Shown: positions 6,586 to 62,384, numbered from the stretch's first letter. The stretch is 64,000 bases of DNA from Hydrolagus colliei (GCA_035084275.1 CM068769.1:1860001-1924000); one strand, 5' to 3'. The notes: generated by a model not told the origin, from the sequence alone. A program made the numbers and translations.

Positions 6586-6897
6586 CTGAGCAGTTGAAGC
6601 CGGCGTCATATTTGTGCGATATTAAGGTTCAGTCACCCCAAGGCCCTGAGCGACATTCTCTCAGAGCAGACTCATTTCCCCTGCACTGATCATGAATCGT
6701 CACAATGGGATCCGATCCTTCCCCAAAATGTGCTGCCCTTAGCGCTGACAGAGCGACACTACAGCCCAGCTCCTTACACATCACAGCCGCGTCCTCCATA
6801 TCCCAGTCAGAGTCCTCCACTGTGCCCCATTGACTAAAGTGGTAAACCTCCACTCTCACTGCACATGGGCGGCGGCCATTCATCATCCTCACATTCC
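6586..6897 (-). pseudogene. SRCR domain exon 3, with an in-frame stop
   Basis: 312-nt phase 1-1 exon GNVRMMNGRRPCAVRVEV...WGTVEDSDWD...CKELGC...QCRGNESALRECRSGPWGD*TLISHKYDAGFNCS. TGA at 6629-6631; canonical AG/GT boundaries. Confidence 0.9.
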
Positions 6898-7769
6898 CTG
6901 TAAAATACAACACGGTATATAAACTCTTTAGCCATATTTACGTGTTTAACTTCTAGTCTTCCTGATGTGAAAAGCGCTATGCAAATGTAATTGTGTTGTT
7001 GTTACCCAGTGTACATACGAGCGTAACAAAGGGAGTGTTTGTGGGGTGAACAGTGCAACAATGTCAATAACTATGAAGTTTATAGTGACCCTTGGTAGCA
7101 CACATTCCACTGATAACGACACAAAAATCCAACCAAAACCCAGCTACTCCTCCTAGTGCATCATTATATCCAGGTACAGAAACCATAGAGCACATTCCAA
7201 CCCACCCATCGCCCCCTTTCTTCCAGTGTACATGCTCATATCGCATACACCCGCAATACATTGCCATGGGTCACAGTCTACCCCACACAGTGTACAACCA
7301 AACCGGCATGTCACAGCTTTCGTACGAACACAGACAATGCTCACTCTGCTTTCAACAAGCATAAACACCCAAAGACACAACATCAGCGAACAGCGCGCTC
7401 ATCAGGGTACGCTCTGGCCATCTGCCACGCCATTCTCCCCCGCAAGGGCACAGCAATTACCATTCCAAACAGGTCCCAGCAAATCGCAAGACGAGCCAGC
7501 ACTGTCGCAGACTCCGTCTCGTATATACAGCGTGTCACCCGCCACGGGCACAGCACACGTCCAACTGGGCACATTCCCCACATTAGTCACTGAATGTCCA
7601 CAATTCAGAGCTCACACAGGAAAAGATGACACCACACAGGTCAGAACCAGACTCCAAAGCAGATGAGCCTCCAAGAACACTCCCACACCAACCAACAAAC
7701 AGCTTCCGCTTTATTGAAAATGTCACTACCTCAACAGACACAGGCTTATCTCCACAGGTCAGAGGCCCA

Positions 7770-8165: not shown

Positions 8166-8993
8166 ATCCGCTAACTAAAGCCGATACCCCTAGGTAGAGC
8201 CTCGCAATTCACTAAAACCGTAATAGTAAATCATCGCGACCAACTTGGGACAGACCAAGCACTTGTCTTCCGCCACCCACCCTTCCCCAAGGGGGAACAG
8301 CAAGATAGGGTGTGAGACAGGTAGGAAGGACGGAGTGACGTGGGAGGGCAGTAGAAGGCACGATCTTAGAGGAGGATTAACCAAACATATTCGATCACTT
8401 CAGTGCGAAGCCACACCCACTCCACTAGCAACAATCCCTGCTCCCCACCCCTTCGCCCGCTGCACCATGCACAGCTACTGAATCTTTATTCACCGCCTTC
8501 CCTCTATACATAGCCGTCCAGCCTTTAGCCACAGGGCACAGCTCCGCCCGCCACGGTAGTCGGTTCCGTACGTAACAGCCTCCAACAACACAGTCACAGG
8601 CTCAGCAGCCAAAGATCCTCCTCTACGTCACAGCCTCTCCACCCAAGGCACAAACCAGCACAGCCCCATGGTGGTTTCTGCTTCCACAACTGCCCCACCA
8701 CATGGGTTCATGCCCCAGAACACAAACACGTGTTTCAGCACACAACCCTCTACCAGTTTGTTCACCCTGCCTTTGTTCAACAACCCCTTTGTTAATCCCA
8801 ATGATCACACACTCATGCTCAGCACTCCCGGCGTTGAACCGCTCCTTGGGCGTACCCCCACTTTGCTGAATACCCACCACCACAGGTAAATTCCATACCA
8901 CTCTGCCTGCGTAGCCTACAGAAACACCATCTTACCATACCAGCCAATACCCCGTATGAAATCGAGTTGATCGTCAGAGAATGTACTATTTAC

Positions 8994-9302
8994 CTGTGCA
9001 AATGACGCTGGCATCAAAGCTGTGTGACAGTTTGTAGAGATTCCAGGTCGTTGATTTACAATCCTTCAGGGCAGACTCACTCCCTGTGCATTGAACAAAA
9101 TACGTCACAATGGGACCTGATCCTTTTCCAAAGTGAGATCCTGTTGGTGCTGAACGAGCCGCTCCACAGCCCAGCTCCATACACAACACAGCTGCGTCAT
9201 TTATATCCCAGCCGTTGTCATACATTGTGCCCCATTGTCCATTGTGGTTAATCTCCTCTCTCCCAGCACATTGACGACTGCCATCCACGAGCCTCACATT
9301 CC
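8994..9302 (-). CDS. SRCR domain exon 2 (intact)
   Basis: 309-nt phase 1-1 exon GNVRLVDGSRQCAGREEINHNGQWGTMYDNGWDINDAAVLCMELGC...DASVICT, with ttttacag acceptor and GTAAAT donor. Confidence 0.92.
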
Positions 9303-10943
9303 CTGTAAAATAACACTCAAAATCTTGAAACTTTGATGCCTTTTTACTTCTCGTCAAACTTTTTGTTTGACTTCTCGTCGGCAAATATATATGGGAGGGT
9401 ATATGTCACATTACGACGGTGATTCCATGGCAAACAATACAACAGCTATAAAAATAACTTTGATGTTTGCTTTGACTGGTGGTGAAGTACAATACGAAAT
9501 GTTTTTCAAAATGACAATGGACTTTTAATATAATTATATTATAGATGATTATGCTTAAATTGTACTTGATATTAGTTTGTTATAACATATCATATTATAA
9601 TTCACGTTAATTTGTTTTGCATTATATTGTATTATTCATCAGTATATTTTACATTGTTAGTTAATTTAATCGAATAATTAGGAAGCACATAGGCAGGCCA
9701 ATCGCCCTGATCGTATATGTGCCACCACTTGGAAAAGAGCTACGAAAATCCACACCATTCTTCCAACCCTCGCATAGCTTGTTATCCCCAAACAATTGTC
9801 TTCTTCCCTCTTCAAAGTTGTTTGTCGATTCGGACTTCCAGCAACATTTCAGGCAATGCATCCCAGATACAACCAGCTGTGTGAAAAAAACGTGTTCTCT
9901 CCTCCGCTCGTTTACTTTTAGTAACTATTTTAATTCAGTGTCCTCAGATAACTGACCATGGGGACAGTTTTTACTTGGTTTACCATATCGAACCAGCTAC
10001 TGGAATGATGCATTCTACATCGTGCTCTCCTAAACTGCTCTGGTCCAAAGAGAATATTTCCATCTTCTCTAGCATCTAACATTAAATTATTATTTGAACG
10101 CTTTCCCAGCCAAAGGACCGCAGGATACGGAACAACTCACATTCAACTTGCTATCAACCAAGCTAACAGTCTCGAACCACCACGCACGGCAACGCAATCC
10201 AGGTAAAGATTCACCCCACACCCAGCTACTCCCATGGTACACAGCAACCAACGGTAGACAAATCCTCAGCCAAACCCCCAAAACACAAACACACTCCTAT
10301 AAATTTCACAGCAACATCCCATAGGCACAGACCTTACATATCTGCAGGTCGCATCCATTCATAGAAGAACTGCCGAGGTCCCTCTTCACTACTGTACCAT
10401 GCACAACAAACCCCACGGAGAACACATCCCCAGAAGCACTAGCGGTGTTGTTATCTATTTCAGGCACAGACCACTACGAAGAGAACTTCCTGCTGCTAAG
10501 GCACAACACATCTCCGCACTGTTACCCCACATAAAGGCTGCCCAACCTCTGATCGCCGCTCCCTATCCGTGCACACACCGCACCACAGCCCCATGGTGAT
10601 TTCTACTTCCACTGCCACCCCACCTCAACTTTATCAGACCGTAGTGCTCATTCAACTGCTCTCAGCCAAAAATTGCCTCCCAACCCGCCCAATTTTCTCA
10701 CCATGCTTTGTTCAACAACTACTTTTTTATCCCAACAATAACATACTCGTGCTGATTACACCTGGTATAGAACCGCCACTTGCTCTTACCCTCAATATGC
10801 GCAATTCGTCGTGCTCATCCAGAACTGTGCTGAATACCTCCAATCCATTCGATTCATAGTGATCCTACACGCACCTACTGTATTGCCATACAGCCCGCAT
10901 TCCCTACGAGATCGAGGTGATAACCAAAGCAAGTATTACTCAC

Positions 10944-11252
10944 CTGTGCATATAACGCTGGCATGAAAGTTGTGTGACGGTGTGTGGTAACTCCGAGTCT
11001 CTGATTTACAATCCTTCAGAGCAGAAACATTTCCTCTGCACTGGAAAGGATACATCCGAATCGGACTGGATCCTGCTCCTAAGTGAGCTCCTCGTGGTGC
11101 TGAAAGCGATAAACCGCAGCCCAGCTCCTTACACACCACAGCCGCGTGCAGCAGATCCCAACCATCATCATCCACTGTGCCCCATTGTCCACTGTAGTTA
11201 AGCTCCACTCTCACAGCACATCGGCCACTGCCACCCATTAGCCTTACGTTTC
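10944..11252 (-). CDS. SRCR domain exon 1 (intact)
   Basis: 309-nt phase 1-1 exon GNVRLMGGSGRCAVRVELNYSGQWGTVDDDGWD...CKELGC...HASVICT, with ttttgcag acceptor and GTGAGT donor. Confidence 0.92.
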
Positions 11253-12724: not shown

Positions 12725-13925
12725 TACTAGATTCATAGATACATAGAATTTTACGGCACAAAAGGAGGCCATTCGGCCCATCTATTCTGTGCCGGCTCTT
12801 TGAAAAGAGCGATTTAATCAAACTGCCCTGCCCGCTCCCCATAGCCTAATAGACCTGTTCTCCCTAAATAAAGATCTAATTCCCTTTTAAAAGTTGTTAT
12901 CGAATCAGCCTCCACCACCATTTCAGCAAATGCATTCCAGATTCGAACAACTCGCTGAGTGAAAGAAGTTCTCCTAAGCTCCCCTCTACTTCGCCATGAA
13001 ACTATTTTAAAACTGTGAACACGAGTCACAGATTCACCCACGAGTGGAAATAGGTTTTCTCTATTTGCCCTGTCGAAACCCCTCATGATCTTGTAAACCT
13101 CTATTAGGTCTCCCCTCAATCTTCTCTGCTCCAGAGAGAATAACCCTAGCCTATCTAGCCTCTAATCATAGCGGAAGACCCTCAATCCTGGCACCATTAT
13201 AGTAAATCTTCTTTGTACCCTTTCCAATGCCTTCACATCCTTTCTGTAGTGTGGTGACCAGAATTGAACACAGTATTCCAGCTGAGGCCTCACCAAAGTC
13301 CTATGAAGGTTAGTCAGCACTTCCTGACTTTTGTACTCTATACCCCTATTTATAAAGCCTAGTATCCCATAAGCCTTCTTAACAGCCTTGTCTACCTGTC
13401 CTGACACCTTCAACGAGTCACTAACACAAATCCCCAGGTCTCTCTGTTCCTTCACACCTTTTAAAATTGTACTATCTAGCCTATATTGCCTCCCTTCATT
13501 TCTTCTCCCAAAATGCATCACCTCACACTTCTCTGCATTAAACATCATCTGCCATGTTTCTGCCCACTTTACCAATTTGTCTATATCCTCTTGCAGATGG
13601 CTACGATCCTCCTCACTATTTACTATTCTCCCTAACCTAGTGTCATCTGCAAACTTGGAAACTGTACTCCGTACACCCAAGTCCAGATCATTGATGTAGA
13701 TTACAAACAGCAATGGTCCCAAAACTGATCCCAGTGGCACACCACTGCTCACTTCCCTCCAATCTGAAAAACAGCCGCTCACTACAACCCTCTGCTTTTT
13801 GTCTCGCAGCCAGTTGTGGATCCACGCTGCCACTGTCACTTTTACGGCATGGGGCTTTAATTTCATAATAAGTCTCTCATGTGGCACTTTGTCAAATGCC
13901 TTTTGAAAGTCCATGTAAACTACAT
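12725..13925 (-). mobile_element. CR1-type LINE, 3' part of the reverse transcriptase ORF
   Basis: ORF 13162-13914 has DFQKAFDKVPH, GVPLGSVLGPLLF, FADDT and LVRPQLEYCVQFWSP. It continues in 12814-13119 (RGDLIEVYKIM...FTQRVV). Confidence 0.95.
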
Positions 13926-26997: not shown

Positions 26998-29499
26998 GTG
27001 TTTGTCGGAGAGTGTGTGTACGAGCGGAGGTGTATGTGTCTGAGGCTTGTATCAGTCACAGACAAGGAGAGAGATACCGTAACTTGTGAGTGTATATATG
27101 TGTGTCTCTCTGTCTTTCTGTTTATGTGTGTGTGTCCCTTTCCCCATGTGTTTGTGCATCTCAGAGTCACATGGTCAGATACAGAGGACTGAGTGTGTTT
27201 CTCTCCCACTTTCACTTGGGCACACAGAGTCAGACACAGATGCCTGTATTTGAGAGATGCTGAGTCAATCTATCTCAGTCTATAGATTGGATTTCACTGT
27301 TTCTCTCACTCTCTCAATGTGTACATAGACACATTGAATCGGAGGGAGGGGATTTGTAAGTATGTCTGTGTCTTTCTCTGTGTGACTCATTCTCCCTCAG
27401 TGTGTATCAGTACCCCAGAGAAACGCAAAGGCCAATGCATTTGTTTGATACTAAATAGTGGGTGAGTTGCCTCTCTATATTTCTCTCGCTGTTACCTTCA
27501 CTCCCTCTCTCCCTCAACTTCTGTCTTTCCACATTCACTTACTTTATCTCTCTGTGTCTGCCTTTCACTTTCTCTCTCGTTCCTCCTCTCCATCTTTGTT
27601 ACATTCTCTCTCTTTCACATTTCCTCGTACTCCATCTCACATTCTCATCTTCTCTCTCAATTCTCTCTTTATTTCACTTTCTTTCTCTCTCCTTCAAACT
27701 TATCTCTCATCTCTCACGTTATCTCTCTCTCTCTCTCTTTCATCTTCACTCACTCTCTCTCTCACGCTGTATACCTCTCGCGCAACTCCTCTCTTTGGCT
27801 CTTTCTCTCACATTTTCTCTTTCAACTTTATTTTTTTCTCTCTCTCCCTCTCTCATTTTCTCTCTATCTCTTTCAACTTGTCTCGATTATCTTCTCTCTC
27901 TGTCAGCCACCTTCTCTCTCTCATCCTCACTCTCTCTCTCTCTCTGTCGCCTTTACTTTCTCTCTCCTTCGCATGTTTCTCTCACACCTACGCTATTTCA
28001 CCATCTCTCTCTCAAACTCACTCACTCACTCACTCACTCATTTACTCAGTCCCTCCCTCTCTCTCTCACTCCCTCCCTCCCTCTCTCTCACACTCCATCC
28101 CTCCCTCACTCACTCACTGAATCACTATCAGTCACCTCCTCTCTCACACACACCCACCTTCTCTCACTTTTGTGCTCAGTCGGTCGCCTCCACCACGGAC
28201 ACATGACTCACGTAACAGGAAGACTGTATCTCAGGCACTGAACTGAAAAGAGAACTGGAATGCTCATCTCCATTCACAATGCACAGACAGAGGTGTCGTC
28301 GTCAATCCGCCATATTACATAGTCCTCGAATACAATATTCAGGTATACAAGGGGTGGGGGAGAGTGGGAGGGGGGGCGAGGGAGGGAGAGAAAGGGAGAG
28401 AGGGGGAGAGACAAGGGGACAGGGAGGAGCGGGGCAGAGAGTGAGATACCGGGGAGAGATACAAGGGGGCAGAGAGGGAGGTGGGGCAGAGAGACAGGGG
28501 GAGAAGAGAACCAAGGGGACAGGGAGGGAGGGGGTTGGGGAGAGAGTGTGGGGGAAAGTGATAGTATACAATATGTATGATAGATGGATAGATGGATAGA
28601 TGGATAGATAGATAGATAGATAGACGGACGGACGGACTATCTCCCCCCTCTCCCTCTCTCTCCCTTCTCACACTCTCTCCCCTGTCACACTCTCTACCCG
28701 TCCCCCTCTCCCTCTCTCTCCCCTGTCACACTCTCTCCCCTCTCTCTTTTTCTCTCTCCCGTATCCCTCTCTCTCCTGTCACACACACTCTAGACGCATC
28801 GAGGACTAACCAAAATGTCTATCTCGGAAAATCAGTAGCGACACTTTGTGGAGTAGATGAGCATTTCATGTCTCTTTTCAGTTCAGTGATCATAGGTCGT
28901 CGCCGATTGATGACACGTTTTGTCTGCGCGACAGTTTTGTGTTTGACAGGAATTAAGGCACCACTCCCCAACCGGGAGCCGCCATTTTGTACGACACTGC
29001 ATATCCCCCGCCGCTGGTGGAGTCGCCATGTTGTACGGTACTGCACGCCCCTCCCCCCACCACCCACACGCCGCGCTGGGAGCCGTCATGTTGTTAGGCA
29101 GCAATTCGCCACCCCGCTTGGAGGGGAGCCGCCATGTTTTTTGGCACATCTCTTCCCACACCCCCCCCCCCCCTCATCTTGAATCCGCCATGTTGTACGG
29201 CATAGCTTCCTCGCTCTGTGTGTGTACCTCTTGGTGCGCACTCGCTCACCTGATTTCGTCAGCATTTCTGTGCTCACTTTCTGTGGTGAAAGTTTATTGA
29301 TCAATTGATCAAGCTACATCAAATGAGTTCTGCTGGAGTTATTGACAATTATTTTACCATCAGATTTCACTTCAAATATATACATTATATATGTCCAGAA
29401 GTTGTGATAAAGCGCTGTGTCAAATTCAAGGATTATTATTATTATATATATCTCCCAAACTTCCCCTTCGTCCCTCTCTCTCACCATAAATCATCACGT

Positions 29500-52165: not shown

Positions 52166-52729
52166 AGTCACTGCCACTCACAGACAAAGCTCTTCCCACA
52201 AAAGTGAGTTGGACACCGCCTCCACCCTCCTCCTCCTCCTCCTCCTCCTCCTCCTGGGTCATATTCTGCTTTGGTGTGAAGCGTCTTGTTCACCTACGAC
52301 TTACACAGGGACATACGTGATCACTCGATCAAGGATACCTGGATTAGAGCTATAATTGTAGTTTCTCAGGAATATAGAAGAGTTAAAGGTAATTTCACAC
52401 CCAACTTTCAAATTGTTATTTACCGATAAATGCGGAATCCAATTCCGCACATGGGCGTCCCACAAGTGTGTTGGATTGGAGAGCTACAACTTCTTCACAT
52501 GAATTCTTATCCCCAGGACAGCGATTCTGTCAATCGATCAAAAACCGAGCTACTCCATATTTCAACGTAAATAGATGTGTGTGGAGTAAGGAAGGCGGTT
52601 TGCTGAGTGTTTCACCATGCGCGATTCCAGCTCACTTTCTCTTGATTCCAAAGCAGGTACTCTAACCAATGAGCTGCAATAACCCCAGCATGTTATTGTA
52701 CAGGTCCTTCGTAAACACACATCACTGTG

Positions 52730-53165
52730 CTCTCCTCACAGAAGTAAGTGGCGGAGTCAGACACTCGCACGTCTCGGATCGATAACGTGCTATTTTTTCC
52801 AACAGTCAATGCATTTATTCTCTCCTTCGGCTTCATCTATCTTCATGCCAACACTATTAATTGGATGGAGCCGTTTCCATATTGTTTGTACCATTGAAAG
52901 TTTGGGCCGATCGTAGTGGTGCTACACTCCATAGATACATTTCCATTTTCTTTCTCTGTCATGGAGAGTGGTCTCTCTGTCGCTTCATTGTCAGCCTGGG
53001 GGAACATACATGGACATTCTAGCAAACAAACTTGGAAAAAAGCTATAACACAAATTTAGTTAATAGGAAAAAGAGAAAGTGTTTGTCCATACTGGGGCTT
53101 TACTTACAGCAGATCAGAACCATTAAAGTAAGAAAAATATGCATTGCGGTGTAAACTGGCTTCAT
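52730..53165 (-). pseudogene. TCR alpha-type V pseudogene V9 (V4/V7 family)
   Basis: Leader 53108-53165 (MKPVYTAMHIFLTLMVLIC) and V exon 52730-52995, which lacks about 8 nt at its start and carries TGA and TAG in the CDR2 region. 23-RSS CACAGTG/ACAATAACA. Confidence 0.88.
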
Positions 53166-56100
53166 TCTCAATCCTCGCTGAGTCAAGTCAAAATCTGTCA
53201 GAGACCTGCATCGGGAAATCATCCAAAGCCTGATAAACGTTTATGAATATTTGTCGAATGCTTTTAACTTTGCAGGTAATAACTATATGTTGAGTGAAGG
53301 CTTCTCTGATATTCCACTTCCTGTATGTTGGCTTGTGCTCCATTCATTCGTTAGTCGACTGTCATTAGGGTTCACACTCACAGCTGGAAAAACAGAGGCA
53401 TGTTTGTGGATGACGAAAACACACCTAGTGTTTTCCTGCTCGAAAGATGACACACTTAAGAGGCAAGCTTTCTAACCATTAAAGTAAAGGACATCTCCTT
53501 GTTTATTCCAAGCAAGCAGGGCGATAGACTGGATGTCATTAAATATCTGGATAAAGACAGTGGAGGAATCGTGAAGGTTCCAAGATTTGTGCTGATCTGC
53601 CCTACAAAAGTCCTGGCGATAAGCCAGGCTGGGCTGTTGTCATCAGCAGTGGGAATAACTGGGAAGAATTCTTACAATGTGTTACCAACCTACAGATAAA
53701 GTCTGCTCATACATGTTCTTCTCTGCTAAATGAGGACAAGGGATTTTACTCAGAACATAGTGAGAAATTACACAGTGCATCGCCGCCATCTGGGGTAGTA
53801 AGGTGATACTGCCGATTATTATCGTTAAGTTGAACACAAAAAGGAGGCCATTCGGCGCATTGATTGGGTGCCGGGTTTATGAAAAGAGCAACTCAATCCC
53901 ATTCTCCAGTTCTTTCCCCAAAACCGCGCAATCCCGTACTCCCCAAATCAATGTATACCGGATATATCTTGATCAGAAATCAGACTAGAGACTGTCGCAG
54001 ATGGTTCGGGAGTGTGTGGCGGGGTTTGAATGGAAGTTATGAATGATTCTGACAACGTGTTGCCTAGCTGTAGATCAGGTCTTGTCAAACTTTCTCTTCT
54101 CAGCTCAAGGAGACCAAGGAATTTCACTTGTGTGCAGTTACACAGCGCATCGCCACCATCTGTCGGTAGTAATGCAGGATTTTTGTTATCGTTAATTCAA
54201 CACAAACAAACTGCACAATAGCATCAGGGGAGATGTACTCGGCTTTAAGTCTCTCTAAAATTTGATAATATTAAACTGACCTGAGGCGCAAAGCAATAAT
54301 AATTATCATTGCATTTCATACAACTCTTTCCATGTTCTCCACATATCTTGTGGGAACCTCACATCATTTAAGGTAAAGTGTATTAGCCGTACGTTTGTGA
54401 TGGAATCTGTCAGAGAATTGAGCAAATCAGATTCCCACAAAAGTTGCTGGATGGAAGTGACCAATTCATCAATTTTGTTATGATGAATAAAAGTAATGTC
54501 CTGGGATTCAATTGCGACATGATTAATTATATAACCACGTGATAACTAATGAAGATGTATTGGAACTTTACAATAGAACACTGAGAAAAATTCAAAACTT
54601 GATCCTACGCAATCTGTGAGGAAGAAACCCATACAGTTTGCGTTTTTTTTTGGAAAAAATAATAAAATCTGAACTGAATAAACTTAGAGCTATAATACCG
54701 CATTCAGCCACTGGGCAGTTATTGTTTTGTGAACACAAGGAGTGAATACAGTGCAACACCGCCAAATGTTGGACATGTGGTTGTACTACAGACCTTCATG
54801 TCAATTCCCATCTGCCTGGACTTGGGAAACATTGTATTCCCTCTTCACCCCCCCCCCACCCCCCCCATTCTGTGCCTTATTTCTTTCAGTTATTGGGGGA
54901 GTCAGGAAACTGGCAATAAGGTGCACTGCGGAATTTTAACTAAATATTTTTATCCCTGCTGTCAGCACATATTTGTCATTCTTATCAACGGGTTCTGTGT
55001 TTAAATTGCTTCTGTGTATTTTGAATGATAGCAACGACAGCATATACTTAGATAGTACTGCTGAAACAGAGTAGTGTGTCAGAGCTGGACACAGTTGTGA
55101 AACCTGACGCAAGGTCAGAATGAATGGGGAGAGAATCGGAGGTACAACCACCCCTACAGACATCCGATCACCATCCTCACACAACTCAACCAGCTTCTCC
55201 CCATTCTCGCATTCTCGCAGGCCATCTCAATCTTTTATATTTACGCGAAGTGTATGTAACTACCAACTGTTTTACATTGTGCTCAACTGTGTCTCCTATT
55301 GGACCTCAAAATATTTAGAGAATCCAAACAAATCCCTGCTAATTTTGTGCAATCCACCTAATCATGGGATTTCCAATCTACTCGAATGGAGTGTGCTCTC
55401 CGTCTCAAAGGAAAACATGCATTCAAGTTAGCCATTTGCAAAGAGTATAAAGTTTCCTAACCGCACTCCACTGAAAACAATGCCTAACAAAACAACACTA
55501 CATTGTTCATGTTAATTCATGTCTGAGTGTTGGACACTGCTGTGTGCATTTGGCTGCCGCAGTTCATATACATTTTACTGTATATGCTGTGAGGAGCCAT
55601 GGGATGGCAAGACAGCATGAAAAGCTCCATATCAAATTGAAAGAATATTATTGTTATTATTATTGTAATGATGATTGTTAATCTCGTCCCCCTTTTTAGT
55701 GTGTTTCATGTCCCCGGCACTTACTACACCAGCATTGACAATTCTGTTATCAGCCTATTCTCTCCCAAATTCAGGAACTCCATCCTAGATTCACTTTGCA
55801 TTCCCACGTAGCATTCTGACTTTCAGGTCGTCCTCAAAAAGTTCCTCTTTGAATCATCATTATCAGTACCCCCACCTTCCCCTCCCCAACACACACACCT
55901 CCCCTCACTCCCCCCAGCACCACCACCAGCTCCGATACAAACCCCTCACTGTGCAGTCACTTGGGACGTGGTTTCAAAAGAAAAAAGTTACTGTATACAT
56001 TTGATTTTTTGTTGTTATCTCGTCTTGACACAGGCATTTACATGCGACTCTATAGAAAGCTGATGACAGACCAGCCCGGCTGGCTGATAGATAGGTCTGA

Positions 56101-56394
56101 ACTGCTGTTGACTGAACATGTTGGAATATGATATGAACTGTAAACTAAATCACTGCCAATTAAATGAAACAATTTTTTTGTAACAATAGTGATAGTTCTT
56201 GCATTGCTATTGCATCTTTGCAGACCTCAACGACGTTTCAAGGCGGTTCACAGAACCAAAATGAAAAGTGAATATACTGTAAATTGTGCAGTCAAAATTC
56301 GGCACGCCATTTCCGCAAAGCAGTGTCAATCGTGGATTGAAATGAACAATTGCAATATTGTTGTTGTTTTTCGACGAATTCTTCTTGCAATCTG

Positions 56395-56695
56395 GAGAAA
56401 CCAAGCTGGGGAGACCTGTGTTCCAATCCAGGCAGGTCAGGGCGAAACCTTGTGCAATTATCCTTACTCCACACGCCTAATAATAATCCGTCAAAAAACA
56501 AACACAATAATAAAATCGGTCATTTCAATCCACGACTGATTGTGGGACACTGCTGTGCGCAAATGGCTGCCGCGATTCGCCCACAAATAAACAGACAATT
56601 CACTTTACGATATATTCTGTGAAGCGCTTTGTGAAATTGATAAGGTGTGGAAAGCGCTATATCGAATGCAGGATTATTATTATTATTATATTATT
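56395..56695 (+). mobile_element. Near-complete tRNA-derived SINE with L2-like tail
   Basis: B-box-like head, core ctgtgcgcaaatggctgccgcg, ctgtgaagcgcttt...gcgctatat and (ATT)n tail. Many partial copies occur in the window. Confidence 0.7.
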
Positions 56696-57951
56696 AGGCG
56701 TGTGTGTGGAGTTAGGAAACTAGCACAAGGTTTCGTCCTGATCTGCCTGGATACGAACACAGGTCTCCTGCGTATGTGTGTGAGTGCTCTAATCATTGAG
56801 CGACATGAGCTACAGACTTTCAGAGTTAGAGCTCAGAGATAATCAAACTCACAGAGGCTTGTGGTACTGCATGAATGTAACTTTTATATAATCACGAGAA
56901 TGTGAAGATACGTAGCGTTGCTAATCTGTATCTGCTGCCCTTTCCTCCCTCTGGAGAATGTTCATCTTGACGCCAGTGAGTGAGCAATACACACTGCGGA
57001 ATTTTACTGATCTATTTGCTCAACTCTCTAACCTTTAGTATCGATTAATTTACCGCAATGCAGTACGCAGACCATGTCATCAAAATAACCCTTCCCTACT
57101 GGAACAACATCAGTACAAACAAGAGCAGTAGGGGACCACAGCTAGTTTTCAGAATCCCACCAACTCCAACTCCACATCACAGGTCATGTCTTACCACCAA
57201 CCAAAACATTTGCTTCTTTTCGTACATTGTTCATCTAAATCATCTCCTATTACATTCTTTATCCTCGCAAACAGGCTTGAAGAAGCAAGGGAATCTATAT
57301 ATATGTATATGTATGTATATATTTAAATCAAACTTTGGAACGTTACAGTCTTCAAATCAACCTCGATGCTAAACATGGGATCAAACTGTCGTGGGTTGTA
57401 ATGAACAATTTTATACTGTGGGTTTTTTGGGACAGATTATAATTAGCCTCGTGGAGTAAGGAAACTAACCCAAAGGTTTTCATCACAAAGGTTTACACAT
57501 TGCTCAGCGAGTTTGTTTTTGTAAGGTGATCTTTATTAATGTAAAATACATAGCAAAACATCATTGAAAATTCCATTAACAGATTTTAAATTGTTCATTT
57601 CAAAAAATAGTTACAAATATATTTTAGCAACGCTTACTGAAAGAACATCTACAATCCAGTAAACATTAATAAAGTGCTTTGAAACATTTTACTGAAGCGA
57701 ACGCTGCAAAGTAAAACGTGACAGTTATTACTGTACTTGAAATTTTCTGGTGCATGTAGCCGCACAGCCTTCAAGCGGTCAAATCCACATCACACGTCAC
57801 AGGAGACAGACAGAGAATTTGGAAGTGAGTGGATAAAAGCATGCGAGCAAAGGCAAAGGCGGGAAATTATATCAAGATTAAGATAAAGATGCCATGGAAT
57901 GACAAAGAGGATGAAATGGAGACCGGCTGGATTCTGATGTTTGAGAGGAGA

Positions 57952-59106
57952 TCAGTGGAGAGCTTGGCGCGATTCTTCAATAAGCCTTTCTTGACGCTTG
58001 TCTGGTTTCATTGGTCGGCATTCGATCACCAGCACCACAATAATAGCCAGCAACACTACGATAGCCGGGCTGATCCGGACACAGTTGATGATTTCCATCA
58101 TATTCCAGGAACCTGTGAGATAGATATGTTTAGTCAATTAATCATGATTACAATTGCCAGCTGGGTGTCCAACAAAATGGACATCAAACAACTTCAATTT
58201 GCATACCGCCCTCCTCGCAGGATGGCGCGTCTCAACCCATTACCGTATTTAAATATATTCAATGAAGTTTGATAGCGACACATCTGAATACTTCAATGTG
58301 CAGTGAAATGGATTTGAAGTTATTTAGAAGGGATAGCACGGAAACAACGACAACAACATTTTGTTGTCATCCCCTCTCCGCCCCCCCCCCCCCTCGCCGT
58401 CTCTCTCTCCCTTCCCCCCATCCGTCTCTCTCCCCCTCTCCCACCCAGCCATCTCTCTCCCCCACTCCCCTCCAGCCATCGCTCTCCCCCTCTCCCGCCC
58501 CCCAGCCGTCTCTCAACCCATCTCCACACCCCAGTCGTCTCTCACCCCCTCTACTCCACCCCCCAGCCGTCTCTCTTCCCCTCTCCTCCCCCCCAGCCGT
58601 CTCTCCCCCTCTCCTCCACCACCTCAGCCGTCTCACTCCCCCTCTGCTCCCCCCAGCCGTCTCTCTCCCCCTCCCCCCAGCAGTCTCTCTCCCCCTCATC
58701 CCCACCCTAGTCGTCTATCTCCCACCCCCACAAGCAGTCTCTCTCCCCCTCACCCCCGCCCCAACCACAGCCGTATCTCACCCCCCACCCCTTGAATACC
58801 TAAATATTGTATTCGAGGACTATGAATACAAAATGGCTCCTTTGCACCTCTGTCTGTGCATTGTGTACAGAAATGAGCATTCTGGGTCTTGGAGTTGATT
58901 GTGCTAGCATCCCGATTTTGTAACTCGATATACCGGGTTTCGATATATCGGTATTTTGTAAATGTCTATATCGGCATATCGATAGGAAAATCATATCGGT
59001 TTTTAACGTGATATACCGATATATTGCCGTTCCCTATGAACTATCTCAACACGGCCTCACCTGCCGTAAAGGTTCCCAGCACTAGACAGACAGCAAACAG
59101 CCTCAT
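57952..59106 (-). CDS. Putative two-exon type I membrane micro-protein: leader plus LRC-activating-type TM exon with Arg (68 aa)
   Basis: Exon 59061-59106 (MRLFAVCLVLGTFTA, G/GTGAGG donor) joins in frame to exon 57952-58112 (ctcacag acceptor; GSWNMMEIINCVRISPAIVVLLAIIVVLVIECRPMKPDKRQERLIEESRQALH*). Each exon is seen directly; the pairing is inferred. Confidence 0.5.
58265..59035 (-). mobile_element. hAT-like MITE copy (reverse orientation) with internal C/T-rich minisatellite
   Basis: 58800-58880 is the reverse complement of the 4235-4310 block, and CGATAT subterminal repeats lie at 58925-59025. Confidence 0.6.
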
Positions 59107-59960
59107 TCCTGCTCTTCAGCCTTCGCTGTTGTGTCTGTGACATCAGTTTGCTGGGAACCAACAGCAATATGCGTCACTAGCAGATCCCACAGTCCCACGT
59201 CACCTCATTGACATCTCAATTGCTTTTACATTGTGCATTACTCCATTATTGTCTTTGTTATTGTGGCGGGTGTGTGGTGGTGGTGGGCGGGTGGGATGTG
59301 GGGAGCAGGGAATCCTCCCACTCAGCTCCTGGCAACCTTACAAACAAAACTTCCAAATATACACTTAACAGTATATATTACGTGAAGCGCTTTTAGAAGT
59401 CGATAATCTGTGGGAAAAGCGCTATTTTACCTTTATAATCAAATTGAAGAATTATTCATCTTATTCTAATCCAATAAATAATGGTCATGAATATCGGATT
59501 AGTTTACGTATACACAAATCGATAGAGCGTTTTTAATTTCATTCCAAGTAAAATTTGTACTAATTCAAACACTTACTCCAACTTATAGCTCAATAAGTGA
59601 GGTTAACACTTTTATTTAGATTTCTAACAGTTGTAAAATTACATTTTTCATCCATTCGAAGATCATCATGTACCTCCAATGATTCGTGGATTACTCATTT
59701 CCTGAATGATCATTGTTATATTAATAATTGTTTACTTTGTTATAGTGTTTTAAAATAATTCCCGACATGAAGCCGTGTGACTTGCTGTGGCCATTGTTTT
59801 ATTGCATGTGGTTGCGAATTAATCATGTGATTCCTCTGAGACACACAGCAGCAAAGTCAAATAGGTGAACTGACAGGAATGACATCTATGCTGTGATTAA
59901 ACACATTAACTCCTCTTTGTAGGTTTATGTGCGGTGGTGTAGCCTGAAGTAAACACGGTG

Positions 59961-60409
59961 CGAGTGATCCAAGAATAGTTTGTGGCTGCATCAGATAGAG
60001 CCGCAGCCAGCACAGTTACAGTGGATGTCTTGCTGCTCGTGTCCAAACTAGTGGTGAAAAGACCTTCAGCAAATTCAGCTCTGAAAGTGTCCCCATCATG
60101 ATCGTGTCTCAGTGTGTACAGAGGAGGCTGCTCTGGATACTGACGGTACTAGTACATGTAAACAATGGTATAACGAGCAGAATAGGTCCATCTCAGTGTC
60201 ACAGTCTGGCCTTCAGTGACAGACACTTCCCTCTGTGATGGTACAACTTGATCTGCATTCGCTGTCGCTGTTGCCAGAGAGAACAGGTTATTCACTGTAA
60301 CGCACGCACCAGAGGTATATCTCCAAACAATTTTCAGAACGAAAGTAAATTACTTACATAAAAGGACCAATAACGTTAACATGTGCAAAGCAATATGTTT
60401 ACTCTCCAT
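59961..60409 (-). pseudogene. TCR alpha/delta-type V pseudogene V10
   Basis: Leader 60358-60409 (MESKHIALHMLTLLVLL) and V exon 59961-60267 with C23>W, W41>stop and C104>S. 23-RSS CACCGTG/ACATAAACC. Confidence 0.87.
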
Positions 60410-61021
60410 GTTTCCAAGCGAGCAAGTCATTCGATGGGAGCTTTTTGAGATGAGAGATTATGGCCTGAATTGTGACTCAAAGCAGAGTGAGGAGCAGTTC
60501 GGACCACAGCACTAATGTATGAGCCTCTATGTCAGATAAACACAGTTTCAACCCCCACCACCGGATTTGTGAAACCTAGCTAGTCAGATGTTGCTCCAAC
60601 GCCTTGTGATGCAGAAATAACAATGGAAATGTATGTTTGTTTTTCTGATGCAATACTGCCAGTTTACTGTTATATTTGAAATATAATTTTTCTACTCTCC
60701 GTCATCCTTCCCCGAACCATCCCCCGTGCTCTTGTCTCTATCCAACTGTACATCATCATGGGACGTCCTCTCCACGTGAAAGGTGCTGAGGAAATGTAAG
60801 CTTTAAGTGATTGATTTACAAAACTGTGAAGTCCTATAGATCAGTGGTAAAATAATCCTATCACAAGCGAGACCCAAAGTAGTGTAATTAAGTTGTTTGA
60901 TGAAAACATTGTGGTAATAATAAATATATTCGTTGTGTTTGATGAAGCGCTTTTCGCCTCTTGTCGACAGAACAAAAAGCGCTTCACACGATATACTGTT
61001 AAGTGAATTGACTGTATGCTT

Positions 61022-61176
61022 GTGAGCGAATCGCGGCAGCCAATTGCGCACAACAGCGTCCCCCACAAACAGTAGAGTATTAAAATTACGTATTTTAGTG
61101 AGCGAAACGCGGCAGCCAATTGCGCACAACAGCGTCCCCCACAAACAGTAGAGTATTAAAATTACGTATTTTAGTG
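61022..61176. repeat. 76-bp tandem duplication inside a SINE
   Basis: Two copies that differ at one base. Confidence 0.95.
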
Positions 61177-61520
61177 TTGTATTTTTTCTTGGAGAGATTA
61201 CTTTTACACGTGTTTAGTAAGGAAACTTGATCAACGTATCGCCCTGAGCTGCCTGGATTCGAACACAGGTCTAAAATTTGCAATGTAAATGTTCTAACCA
61301 CTGAGCTACATGAGCTAAGCAATGGTGTATGTGATTGAAAGTCAATAAAAAAACACCGTGTTACATAGAGATTGTATTTTGAACAACAAAAGCTTGTGAT
61401 AGTCATCTTACTGATAAAGCTTTGTACAAATCGGATGAAGCAGCAATAGTGTATGTGAGGGAAACAATGTCAACTGAATCAGGAAACAGCTGTGTTAGCT
61501 GCCTATGTCGTGTGTTTTGT

Positions 61521-61552
61521 CCGCCACCTGTTGTTGGTTTGCAGCTACAGCA
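61521..61552 (-). promoter_or_regulatory. Weaker CTCF-like site with upstream motif
   Basis: Minus strand TGCTGTAGC-9nt-ACAACAGGTGGCGG; homologous to 38855 and 46158. Confidence 0.45.
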
Positions 61553-62384
61553 GATTTACAATGGAGACATTCGAAAGCAAATTATTTTAGGACTGTCTTG
61601 AATTGTCTCGTCCTTTCTCCTCCCGTGGAAGGGTTTACCTTCGTCTCGTTTCTCTGCTTGTTCCTCATGTTTTCCTAGTGTTCCTAGAAAACTGGACCGA
61701 ATTTAATCAAGAATATATTTCTGTGGTGTGTTCCTGCTCATTCGTGAGCCCCTACACTCCCTTCCCCACCTTCCCAGTTGAGTTAACTATTTGATGAATT
61801 GCTCTTACTTGTTTATATTATTTGACTTCAAAGTGAGTTGACATTGGTCGTGCTACAGTACCAGAACAATAAATTTACCTTTACAAAGCAATGTTCCCAT
61901 TAGGAGAAGTTCCAACTGCATTATGTTCATGAGTCAGATTATTCATTAGAATAATTAGATAATTATTTAGTTTCATAATTCGGTTTTAGATCAATAATGC
62001 AATTTACGTTCTCTCTTTGCCGATTTTCCGATGGGTATCAACATGCGTTTACTGTGCACTTTGATTCCAGCCGTTCAGTGACCCATTTATAAGTAAACTG
62101 TGTGAATCACTATTCCATGCTTCGTAAGAAGGGTATTCTCAATCTCATATGTTTAACAGAAGACAGAAGGGTGAACCTCAATGTGTTTACGAGTAAAATT
62201 CTTGTTACAGCATTAGTTACAACCAGTCTTGGAGCGATGCATGTGCTTTCACACTGTGAATAAAAGTGGACGCTAAGCATTGCAAATTTCCGACTATATC
62301 CATCTCGCTTGCCAGCCCGCACCACCCTCCCCCCCCCCCCCCCACCCACCAATTACCTCTCTTCACATTCACCCTAAAAATTTA

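What the first reader, a model, noticed from the sequence alone, without database searches (positions are those of the whole stretch)
57952..59106. Ig-less micro-receptor with an LRC-activating-type Arg transmembrane segment inside the V cluster
Seen: an open, acceptor-flanked exon GSWNMMEIINCVRISPAIVVLLAIIVVLVIECRPMKPDKRQERLIEESRQALH*. An in-phase leader exon MRLFAVCLVLGTFTA with CRE-like upstream motifs lies about 950 bp upstream; the intron is mostly a MITE and holds no Ig exon. Known: N-x-x-R at the start of the TM followed by an acidic residue at its end, with a short tail, is the signature of FcR-gamma-coupled LRC receptors (GPVI NLVRI, NKp46 NLLRM, LILRA NLIRM). Inference: either a 68-aa membrane peptide driven by a TCR-V-like promoter that could engage FcR-gamma or CD3-zeta adaptors, or the terminal exon of a receptor whose ectodomain exons lie further right, or a splice target for germline V transcripts.
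Basis: partly seen in the sequence, partly recalled or inferred. Interest (0 to 1): 0.8.

Follow-up and report, generated by a model that had tools for sequence, protein, structure and literature searches.

The report
Unsupported two-exon membrane mini-ORF
A neat two-exon reading frame (signal peptide plus one membrane-spanning helix carrying an arginine) really sits among T-cell-receptor V genes of a cartilaginous fish, but nothing shows it is a conserved or expressed gene, so it is a candidate and not a discovery.

Summary
The sequence features are real and at the stated coordinates, on the minus strand. They are an ATG leader exon (59106-59061, MRLFAVCLVLGTFTA, donor CAG|GTGAGG, phase 1), a 948-nt intron, and an acceptor-flanked terminal ORF (58112-57952) that reads GSWNMMEIINCVRISPAIVVLLAIIVVLVIECRPMKPDKRQERLIEESRQALH*.

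- **Intron:** about 69% of it is a dispersed repeat with a G-rich minisatellite. It is not a demonstrable MITE. A V-domain profile finds no Ig relic in it.
- **Setting:** the locus lies in a minus-strand cluster of 11 TCR V or pseudo-V segments. Nine have a 23-spacer RSS-like signal.
- **Quality of the model:** it is the best of 8 loose "signal peptide + TM" two-exon models in the window, and the only one that passes strict criteria.
- **Homology:** none found, in 1.84 billion representative proteins, Pfam or PDB.
- **Limits:** orthologous DNA and transcripts could not be reached, because the source species is not in the databases.
- **NxxR motif:** of the published features of the FcRγ-coupling "NxxR" TM exon, the NxxR motif, the C-terminal acidic residue and the single TM-plus-short-tail exon are present. 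The DYT motif, the Ig exons and detectable homology are absent.

My best reading (about 0.5) is an orphan IgSF or V-type leader and promoter facing a fortuitous or very young hydrophobic ORF. A real micro-protein gets about 0.25 and a receptor relic about 0.15.

The parts
59138..59205 (-). Cluster of three CRE-like sites (TGACGTGG, TGACGCAT, TGATGTCA) 39-96 nt upstream of the ATG. Candidate promoter element.
   Evidence: It is one of two such triple clusters in 64 kb. Only one other identified V promoter here (V48) has even one such site.
59061..59106 (-). Leader exon coding part: MRLFAVCLVLGTFTA plus G of a split Gly codon. Phase-1 donor CAG|GTGAGG at 59060-59055.
   Evidence: It is the only exon in 128 kb (both strands) that passes the strict signal-peptide-plus-donor criteria. 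Chance expectation is 0.17-0.32 per window.
58113..59060 (-). Intron, 948 nt: 36 nt unique, then the repeat, then 261 nt unique. It holds no Ig or V relic.
58374..59024 (-). Dispersed repeat with an internal G-rich minisatellite (58374-58757, period about 28-30 nt). Other copies lie at 4096-~4560 (+) and 28258-28360.
   Evidence: No inverted-repeat pair across 58100-59150.
58113..58140 (-). Acceptor region: possible branch point TTAAT, a moderate pyrimidine tract and CAG|G.
   Evidence: By a crude 3' splice-site score (0.9) it is the best acceptor in the first about 1.35 kb after the donor. Three of four neighbouring V-exon acceptors score 3.6-5.6; V50 scores 1.5.
57952..58112 (-). Terminal exon ORF, GSWNMM...QALH plus TGA. 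Asn is at 58086-58084, Arg at 58077-58075, the hydrophobic core ISPAIVVLLAIIVVLVI at 58074-58024 and Glu at 58023-58021. The tail is basic and has no tyrosine.
57532..57537 (-). AATAAA about 415 nt downstream of the stop. Possible poly(A) signal, in an AT-rich stretch.
   Evidence: read directly from the sequence. It carries little weight on its own.
59922..60409 (-). Neighbouring pseudo-V gene just upstream, with leader, V exon and 23-spacer RSS. It shows that the sequence to the right is a rearranging V segment and not a receptor ectodomain exon.
   Evidence: Cys23 is replaced by Trp, the conserved Trp by TAG (60151-60149), and YYC by NYSW. The RSS is CACCGTG-23-ACATAAACC.

Best explanation
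The locus is a structurally complete but unsupported gene model. A genuine-looking IgSF or V-type signal-peptide exon has a promoter-like CRE cluster and a consensus donor, but no V or Ig exon follows it. The best acceptor downstream of that donor opens a 53-codon ORF. That ORF happens to encode a very hydrophobic helix with an Arg near its outer end and a basic tail. If the promoter fires, the donor would most plausibly join this acceptor and yield a 68-aa type-I membrane peptide. On this reading the peptide is a by-product, or at most a very young lineage-specific micro-ORF, and not a conserved LRC-type receptor.

- **Shown:** the exons, the phases, the splice signals, the repeat in the intron, the absence of Ig relics and the absence of detectable homologues.
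- **Inferred:** that the leader is a real exon, that the TM ORF is fortuitous, and that it has no selected function.
For: - **No homology.** phmmer against 1.84 billion representatives gave one hit, a concatenated protocadherin model matched only through its nine TM copies. Pfam and PDB gave nothing.
- **Hydrophobic ORFs are common here.** There are 40 peaks with a 19-residue Kyte-Doolittle mean of at least 2.3, and this one ranks 10th.
- **Loose two-exon models are common.** Eight loci in the window give a signal-peptide-plus-TM model.
- **Any phase-1 ORF here finds a leader.** Every V leader identified in the cluster is phase 1, so it is automatically in phase with any phase-1 acceptor. The pseudo-V60 leader also fits the 58112 acceptor.
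- **The acceptor is weak.** It scores 0.9, against 3.6-5.6 for three of four neighbouring V-exon acceptors and 1.5 for V50.
- **A defining motif is missing.** The DYT motif of the NxxR TM class is absent.
- **No paralogue** of the exon exists in the window.
Against: - Three separate signals are each the best or near-best of their kind in the window, and all lie within 1.2 kb: the leader with its donor, the TM with its basic tail, and the CRE cluster.
- No paired model appeared in 120 simulated windows.
- By my rough estimate, a real orphan leader followed by a chance in-phase TM exon within 2 kb has a probability of about 1e-4 to 3e-3 per window. That is not clearly higher than the prior for an unknown small gene.
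- Start codon, donor, acceptor and 68 codons are all intact, although the intron carries a repeat whose copies are only about 72% identical. That would be surprising for an old neutral sequence.
- The exon has three of the four published sequence features of NxxR TM exons, and their exon architecture.
Confidence: 0.5

Rival explanations
1. It is a real two-exon gene for a 68-aa type-I membrane micro-protein. After signal-peptide cleavage, predicted after Gly16, the mature protein is about 52 aa. It has a 9-12-residue ectodomain with one Cys, a TM with an outer-leaflet Arg, and a 22-aa basic tail with no signalling motif. It would act through its TM helix, either pairing its Arg with the TM Asp of an ITAM adaptor (CD3-zeta or FcR-gamma type) or competing for that Asp.
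For: - The gene anatomy is complete and intact.
- It is unique under strict criteria, and it is the top model under loose ones.
- No such pair appeared in 120 simulations.
- A CRE cluster lies directly upstream of the ATG.
- The 58112 acceptor is the best one within reach of the donor.
- NxxR, an acidic TM end, and TM plus short tail on one exon match the FcRγ-coupling TM1 class.
- CD3 chains exist in cartilaginous fish (PMC6795676).
Against: - No homologue was found anywhere.
- No expression or conservation data could be reached.
- I defined the criteria after seeing the candidate.
- The pyrimidine tract is weak.
- The DYT motif is absent.
- No known receptor of this class lacks an ectodomain.
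Confidence: 0.25
2. It is the leader and terminal TM exon of an IgSF activating receptor of the NxxR TM1 type. The Ig exon or exons were either deleted, leaving a recent relic, or lie outside the window to the right. In the second case the nearby leader would be unrelated.
For: - The phase-1 acceptor, and TM plus short tail on one terminal exon, are exactly the TM1 exon design.
- The NxxR motif and the acidic TM end are present.
- Families that use this exon evolve by extensive exon shuffling.
Against: - No Ig relic lies in the intron or anywhere in 57400-59150. Without the repeat the intron is only about 300 nt.
- The 4.9 kb to the right hold only a pseudo-V with an RSS, and no other Ig or C-type exon.
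- An old relic would not be expected to keep 68 codons and both splice sites intact.
- No homology to annotated shark or ray receptors was found, although the database does hold annotated proteins of sharks and rays.
Confidence: 0.15
3. The exon mainly serves as a splice target and terminator for germline (sterile) transcripts that start at V promoters upstream. The ORF would be irrelevant.
For: - The V leaders identified here are phase 1.
- The pseudo-V60 leader donor is compatible with the 58112 acceptor.
- An AATAAA lies about 415 nt downstream.
Against: - V leaders have their own strong V-exon acceptors about 100 nt away.
- V exons carry no donor at their 3' end.
- Nothing requires an open TM-coding frame for this role.
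Confidence: 0.05

Closest known systems
NxxR-motif ('TM1') transmembrane exons of FcR-gamma-coupled receptors: LILRA, NCR1/NKp46, FCAR, GPVI, OSCAR and TARM1, plus Xenopus FCRL-like and SLAM-like receptors (PMC6557307, PMC2413239)
   Same: - Arg sits near the N-terminal end of the TM, with Asn three residues before it.
- An acidic residue closes the TM.
- The TM and a short tyrosine-free tail lie on one terminal exon.
- The acceptor is phase 1.
   Different: - There is no DYT motif before the NxxR.
- There is no detectable sequence homology.
- There is no Ig-like ectodomain at all.
- The class is documented in mammals, birds and amphibians (PMC6557307), not in cartilaginous fish.
- The locus is a TCR V cluster, not an LRC, FCRL or SLAM cluster.
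Leader (L-part1) exon and promoter of TCR/Ig V gene segments
   Same: - It is a 46-nt signal-peptide exon that ends in phase 1 inside a Gly codon.
- It lies on the same strand as, and between, V segments.
- One CRE-like site (TGACGCAT) is shared with the V48 promoter.
   Different: - No V exon and no RSS follow it.
- The DNA does not align with the neighbouring V leaders or promoters.
- The donor is much closer to consensus than those of the V genes here.
Disulphide-linked ITAM adaptors with very short ectodomains (CD3-zeta, FcR-gamma, DAP12, DAP10). Comparison from general knowledge.
   Same: - The layout is a signal peptide, an ectodomain of about 10 residues with a Cys, and a single TM with one charged residue.
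   Different: - The charge is basic (Arg) where these adaptors carry an acidic Asp.
- There is no ITAM or YxxM in the tail.
- There is no homology.
Fortuitous or de novo hydrophobic micro-ORFs in non-coding DNA
   Same: - It is lineage-restricted and has no homologues.
- Its core consists of Val, Ile, Leu and Ala codons.
- Many comparable hydrophobic ORFs occur in the same window.
   Different: It comes with an unusually good signal-peptide exon, splice sites and a promoter-like cluster.

Membership tests
NxxR-type (TM1) FcR-gamma-coupling transmembrane exon | Arg in the N-terminal part of the TM, embedded in N-x-x-R | tested here: met
   N-C-V-R: Asn at 58086-58084 and Arg at 58077-58075. Feature defined in PMC6557307 and PMC2413239.
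NxxR-type (TM1) FcR-gamma-coupling transmembrane exon | [quoted passage not shown] | tested here: met
   Glu at 58023-58021, 17 hydrophobic residues after the Arg. Feature from PMC6557307.
NxxR-type (TM1) FcR-gamma-coupling transmembrane exon | Consensus DYT motif N-terminal to the NxxR | tested here: not met
   The residues before the Asn are W-N-M-M-E-I-I, with no D-Y-T. Feature from PMC6557307.
NxxR-type (TM1) FcR-gamma-coupling transmembrane exon | TM and a very short, tyrosine-motif-free tail encoded by the same (terminal) exon | tested here: met
   One exon, 58112-57952, carries the TM, a 22-aa tail without Tyr, and the stop. Feature from PMC2413239.
NxxR-type (TM1) FcR-gamma-coupling transmembrane exon | Recognisable sequence homology to other TM1 exons ('strongly conserved') | tested here: inconclusive
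   phmmer against 1.84 billion representatives and against PDB found no receptor. A 20-30-residue TM match could never reach significance in a library of that size, and no curated TM1 set was available.
NxxR-type (TM1) FcR-gamma-coupling transmembrane exon | Belongs to a receptor with Ig-like ectodomain exons | tested here: not met
   There is no Ig or V signal between the leader and the TM exon. To the right, up to 64000, the only signal is a pseudo-V with an RSS.
NxxR-type (TM1) FcR-gamma-coupling transmembrane exon | Physical or functional association with FcR-gamma that depends on the Arg | not testable with these tools
   Needs co-expression and co-immunoprecipitation with an Arg-to-Ala control.
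TCR V gene segment (leader taken as L-part1) | Short leader exon ending in phase 1 | tested here: met
   59106-59061, with G|GT split across the intron. It has the same phase as the V42, V48, V52 and V60 leaders.
TCR V gene segment (leader taken as L-part1) | V exon about 100-300 nt downstream, followed by a 23-spacer RSS | tested here: not met
   The V HMM and tblastn find nothing in 57400-59150. I read 58380-57700 by eye for a heptamer and nonamer and found no convincing RSS.
TCR V gene segment (leader taken as L-part1) | Leader and promoter similar to neighbouring V genes | tested here: not met
   Alignment A1: V42, V48 and V52 align with one another and the candidate does not. blastn against the window gives no hit outside the repeats.
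TCR alpha/delta constant-region TM exon | Arg and Lys five residues apart in the TM (CD3 assembly motif; general knowledge) | tested here: not met
   The sequence after the Arg is I-S-P-A-I, with no Lys in the TM. PDB holds full-length TCR chains and phmmer gave no hit at E up to 10.
ITAM adaptor (CD3-zeta, FcR-gamma, DAP12) | Asp in the TM and an ITAM in the tail (general knowledge) | tested here: not met
   The TM carries Arg and no Asp, and the tail has no Tyr.

The most novel reading that the evidence does not exclude
A cartilaginous fish expresses, from inside its TCR V cluster, an Ig-less 68-aa type-I membrane peptide. Its NxxR-type helix would pair with, or compete for, the TM Asp of ITAM adaptors (CD3-zeta or FcR-gamma). 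It would be a natural 'ectodomain-free' modulator of antigen-receptor assembly. It would also be evidence that the NxxR TM module predates tetrapods.
Probability: 0.1. Interest if true: 0.8.

Novelty: not a real feature. Interest (0 to 1): 0.3.

Why it matters
**If it is real.** It would be the first receptor-class TM module known to exist without any ligand-binding domain. It would move the origin of the FcRγ-coupling NxxR transmembrane exon from the mammals, birds and amphibians in which PMC6557307 documents it back to the jawed-vertebrate ancestor. It would also suggest a new way of tuning TCR and adaptor assembly.

**If it is not real**, which I judge slightly more likely. It is a useful caution. 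In a V cluster every leader identified is phase 1. Any open hydrophobic frame behind a phase-1 acceptor can therefore be assembled into a convincing-looking 'receptor'.

Tried and rejected
1. **Homology of the TM exon.** I tried phmmer against 1.84 billion representatives, Pfam and PDB. The only hit was a protocadherin TM artefact.
2. **Reaching orthologous DNA.**
   - I searched with the 147-aa antisense ORF that covers the exon, in case an ORF caller had recorded it. No hits.
   - I searched with the neighbouring V48. It hit only Callorhinchus milii V domains at about 60% identity, and those have no contigs on record. Conservation and dN/dS could therefore not be tested.
3. **Decayed V exon.** The idea that the TM exon or the intron is a decayed V exon is rejected by the V HMM with positive controls and by tblastn.
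4. **RSS relic downstream of the leader.** I read the sequence by eye and found none convincing.
5. **Diverged TCR-delta or TCR-alpha constant TM exon.** This lead came from my memory of an 'NMM...R' stretch in human TRDC. I rejected it because there is no Lys five residues after the Arg, and because PDB, which holds full-length TCR chains, gave no hit.
6. **Leader or TM exon as part of the repeat.** Rejected. Homology with the 4-kb copy starts 36 nt after the donor and ends at the minisatellite.
7. **MITE label.** No inverted-repeat pair was found across 58100-59150.
8. **Paralogue of the exon in the window.** None.
9. **Structured RNA in 55500-62000.** No Rfam match.
10. **CpG content as a sign of constraint.** The exon region has a CpG observed/expected ratio of 0.77 against a window mean of 0.62, which is unremarkable.

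Full report
**1. What is there**

All features are on the minus strand.
- An ATG at 59106 opens MRLFAVCLVLGTFTA and ends after one extra G at a consensus donor, CAG|GTGAGG (59061/59060).
- 948 nt further on, the acceptor ...tatctatctcacag|GT (58113/58112) opens a frame that joins the leader in phase 1. It reads GSWNMMEIINCVRISPAIVVLLAIIVVLVIECRPMKPDKRQERLIEESRQALH and stops at TGA 57954-57952.
- The predicted product has 68 aa. Its signal peptide has an n-region (MR), an h-region (LFAVCLVLG) and small residues at -3 and -1 if it is cleaved after Gly16. This is my reading of the sequence, since no SignalP was available.
- The mature product would have about 12 extracellular residues with one Cys and no N-glycosylation sequon. 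Its hydrophobic core has 17 residues and a 19-residue Kyte-Doolittle mean of 2.94. The tail has 22 residues, is basic and has no tyrosine.
- An AATAAA lies about 415 nt after the stop.
- An unspliced transcript could also start at the ATG ATG at 58101-58096 and give a 49-aa peptide without a leader.

**2. The intron**
- It consists of 36 nt of unique sequence, then a dispersed repeat (59024-58374), then 261 nt of unique sequence.
- The repeat's 3' part is a G-rich minisatellite of 28-30-nt units (58374-58757).
- The repeat has a second copy at 4096-~4560 on the plus strand, about 72% identical, and a fragment at 28258-28360.
- Homology between the copies begins after the donor and ends at the minisatellite, so neither exon is part of the repeat.
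- No inverted-repeat pair was found across 58100-59150, so 'MITE' is not supported.
- A V-domain HMM built from the window's own V exons and five Callorhinchus V domains finds every pseudo-V fragment used as a control at 15-69 bits. It finds nothing above 4 bits anywhere in 57400-59150 on either strand. tblastn agrees. The gene model really has no Ig exon.

**3. Surroundings**
- The window carries 11 V or pseudo-V segments, all on the minus strand, at about 32.5, 36.0, 36.8, 39.5, 42.4, 44.3, 46.8, 48.8, 51.0, 52.7 and 60.0 kb.
- Nine of them have a 23-spacer RSS-like signal in the scan. The pseudo-V60 RSS was read by hand. V36 showed only a weak 12-spacer match. The V exons match the Pfam V-set family.
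- Immediately upstream of the leader lies a pseudo-V (60409-59922). Its Cys23 is replaced by Trp, its conserved Trp by TAG and its YYC by NYSW. Its RSS, CACCGTG-23-ACATAAACC, is intact. The sequence to the right is therefore a rearranging segment and not a receptor ectodomain exon. No other Ig or C-type exon lies between 53.2 and 64 kb.
- The nearest database relatives are Callorhinchus milii sequences. Its V domains are about 60% identical to the V42/V48/V52 family, and a C. milii reverse transcriptase is 70% identical to the LINE fragment at 13.2-13.9 kb. Sharks and rays are further away.
- The source is therefore a cartilaginous fish, probably of the chimaera lineage, whose own proteins are not in the searchable collections.

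**4. Is it more than chance?**
- The hydrophobic stretch alone is not special. It ranks 10th of 40 hydrophobic peaks in the six frames. Most of the others come from simple repeats.
- I then applied strict composite criteria: an acceptor with a pyrimidine tract, an open frame, a hydrophobicity mean of at least 2.5 that is not low-complexity, and at least four Lys or Arg after the helix. This is the only candidate in the window. Markov simulations of the window give 0.05-0.07 per window.
- With strict leader criteria, the 59106 exon is the only hit in 128 kb. Simulation gives 0.17-0.32 per window.
- No simulated window out of 120 had a TM exon with an in-phase leader.
- The three CRE-like sites at -96, -70 and -39 form one of only two such clusters in the window.
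- The 58112 acceptor is the best within 1.35 kb of the donor by a crude score. It is weak, at 0.9, against 3.6-5.6 for three of four neighbouring V-exon acceptors and 1.5 for V50.
- Two cautions apply. I set all these criteria after seeing the candidate. With loose criteria, 8 loci in the window give a signal-peptide-plus-TM two-exon model, although this one is first on every measure.
- In a V cluster the relevant null is not pure chance. It is a real phase-1 leader followed by a chance phase-1 hydrophobic ORF. I estimate that at roughly 1e-4 to 3e-3 per window. That is the same order as a reasonable prior for an unknown small membrane-protein gene. The evidence therefore leaves about even odds.

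**5. Homology and conservation**
- phmmer with the exon against 1.84 billion representative proteins returned one hit. It is a 1824-aa concatenated protocadherin model, matched only because it holds nine copies of a TM segment.
- Pfam and PDB gave nothing.
- There is no paralogue in the window.
- Attempts to reach orthologous DNA failed, both through the antisense ORF and through neighbouring V proteins.
- The absence of hits is weak evidence. A TM-only match cannot become significant in so large a library. The source species is also not represented, because not even its own V48 was found.

**6. Comparison with the NxxR class**
- The published definition of the FcRγ-coupling TM subtype lists four sequence features (PMC6557307). 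They are the essential Arg, the invariant residue that makes up N-x-x-R, a DYT consensus at the N-terminus, and acidic residue(s) at the C-end.
- In Xenopus FcR-like genes, the TM and the very short tail lie on the same exon (PMC2413239).
- The candidate has NxxR, the acidic end (Glu 17 residues after the Arg) and the single-exon TM-plus-short-tail design with a phase-1 acceptor.
- It lacks DYT, any Ig exon and any detectable homology.
- It therefore looks like such an exon, but it cannot be filed as a member of the class.
- It is not a TCR constant TM exon, because there is no Lys five residues after the Arg. It is not an ITAM adaptor, because it has no Asp in the TM and no tyrosine.
- The promoter and leader do not align with neighbouring V promoters, and only V48 shares a single TGACGCAT site. 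'V-like promoter' therefore remains an analogy.

**7. Verdict**
- The most likely explanation (about 0.5) is an orphan IgSF or V-type leader and promoter whose strong donor faces a fortuitous or very young hydrophobic ORF.
- A real 68-aa membrane micro-protein gets about 0.25. The adaptor-pairing mechanism is only one part of that.
- A relic or terminal exon of an NxxR-type receptor gets about 0.15.
- A mere splice sink for germline V transcripts gets about 0.05.
- One point speaks against an old relic and slightly in favour of function. The ATG, both splice sites and all 68 codons are intact, although the intron carries a repeat whose copies have diverged to about 72% identity. The age of that insertion is not known, however.
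- The question would be settled by junction reads, a whole-genome search for paralogues, and the syntenic sequence in related species. None of these could be reached here.

Noticed in passing
window 6629-6913, 8986-9384, 10936-11238 (minus strand): Three single-exon SRCR domains (Pfam PF00530, E 7e-21 to 6e-25) lie on the same strand as, and downstream of, the TCR V cluster. They look like a group-B-style SRCR receptor gene next to the V segments.
   Followed up: no
window 59922-60409 (minus strand): A pseudo-V gene with an intact leader and 23-spacer RSS. It has Cys23 replaced by Trp, the conserved Trp replaced by TAG (60151-60149), and YYC replaced by NYSW.
   Followed up: yes
window 52714-53165 (minus strand): The V52 segment is a pseudogene with two in-frame stops (LIVLA*R*MKPK), but it keeps its leader and RSS. 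It belongs to the V42/V48 family, which is about 60% identical to Callorhinchus milii V domains.
   Followed up: partly
window 4096-~4560 (+), 28258-28360, 58374-59024 (-): A dispersed repeat family with a CGATAT-rich 5' part and an internal G-rich minisatellite of 28-30-nt units. The copies are about 72-81% identical.
   Followed up: partly
window 13162-13914 (minus strand): A LINE reverse-transcriptase fragment (Pfam RVT_1). Its best database hit is a Callorhinchus milii RT at 70% identity. Sharks and rays give 54-61%.
   Followed up: partly
window 57829-58272 (plus strand): A 147-aa ORF runs exactly antisense to the TM exon. It is the mirror image of the hydrophobic codons and has no homologues.
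   Followed up: yes
window around 25897: The only other cluster of three CRE-like half sites in the window. It lies in a microsatellite-rich stretch (20-28 kb).
   Followed up: no
window 59359-59425, 56610-56660, 60975-61008, and 57401-57462 with 56461-56523: Short interspersed repeat fragments (containing ...AAAGCGCTTCAC...) flank the 1.9-kb unit that holds the leader and the TM exon. tRNA-like SINE sequence lies near 56.7-56.8 kb.
   Followed up: no
protein P0001 (database, not the window): An 1824-aa database protein is a concatenation of repeated protocadherin pieces. It reached E = 3e-8 only because nine TM copies were summed. This is a trap for short TM queries.
   Followed up: yes
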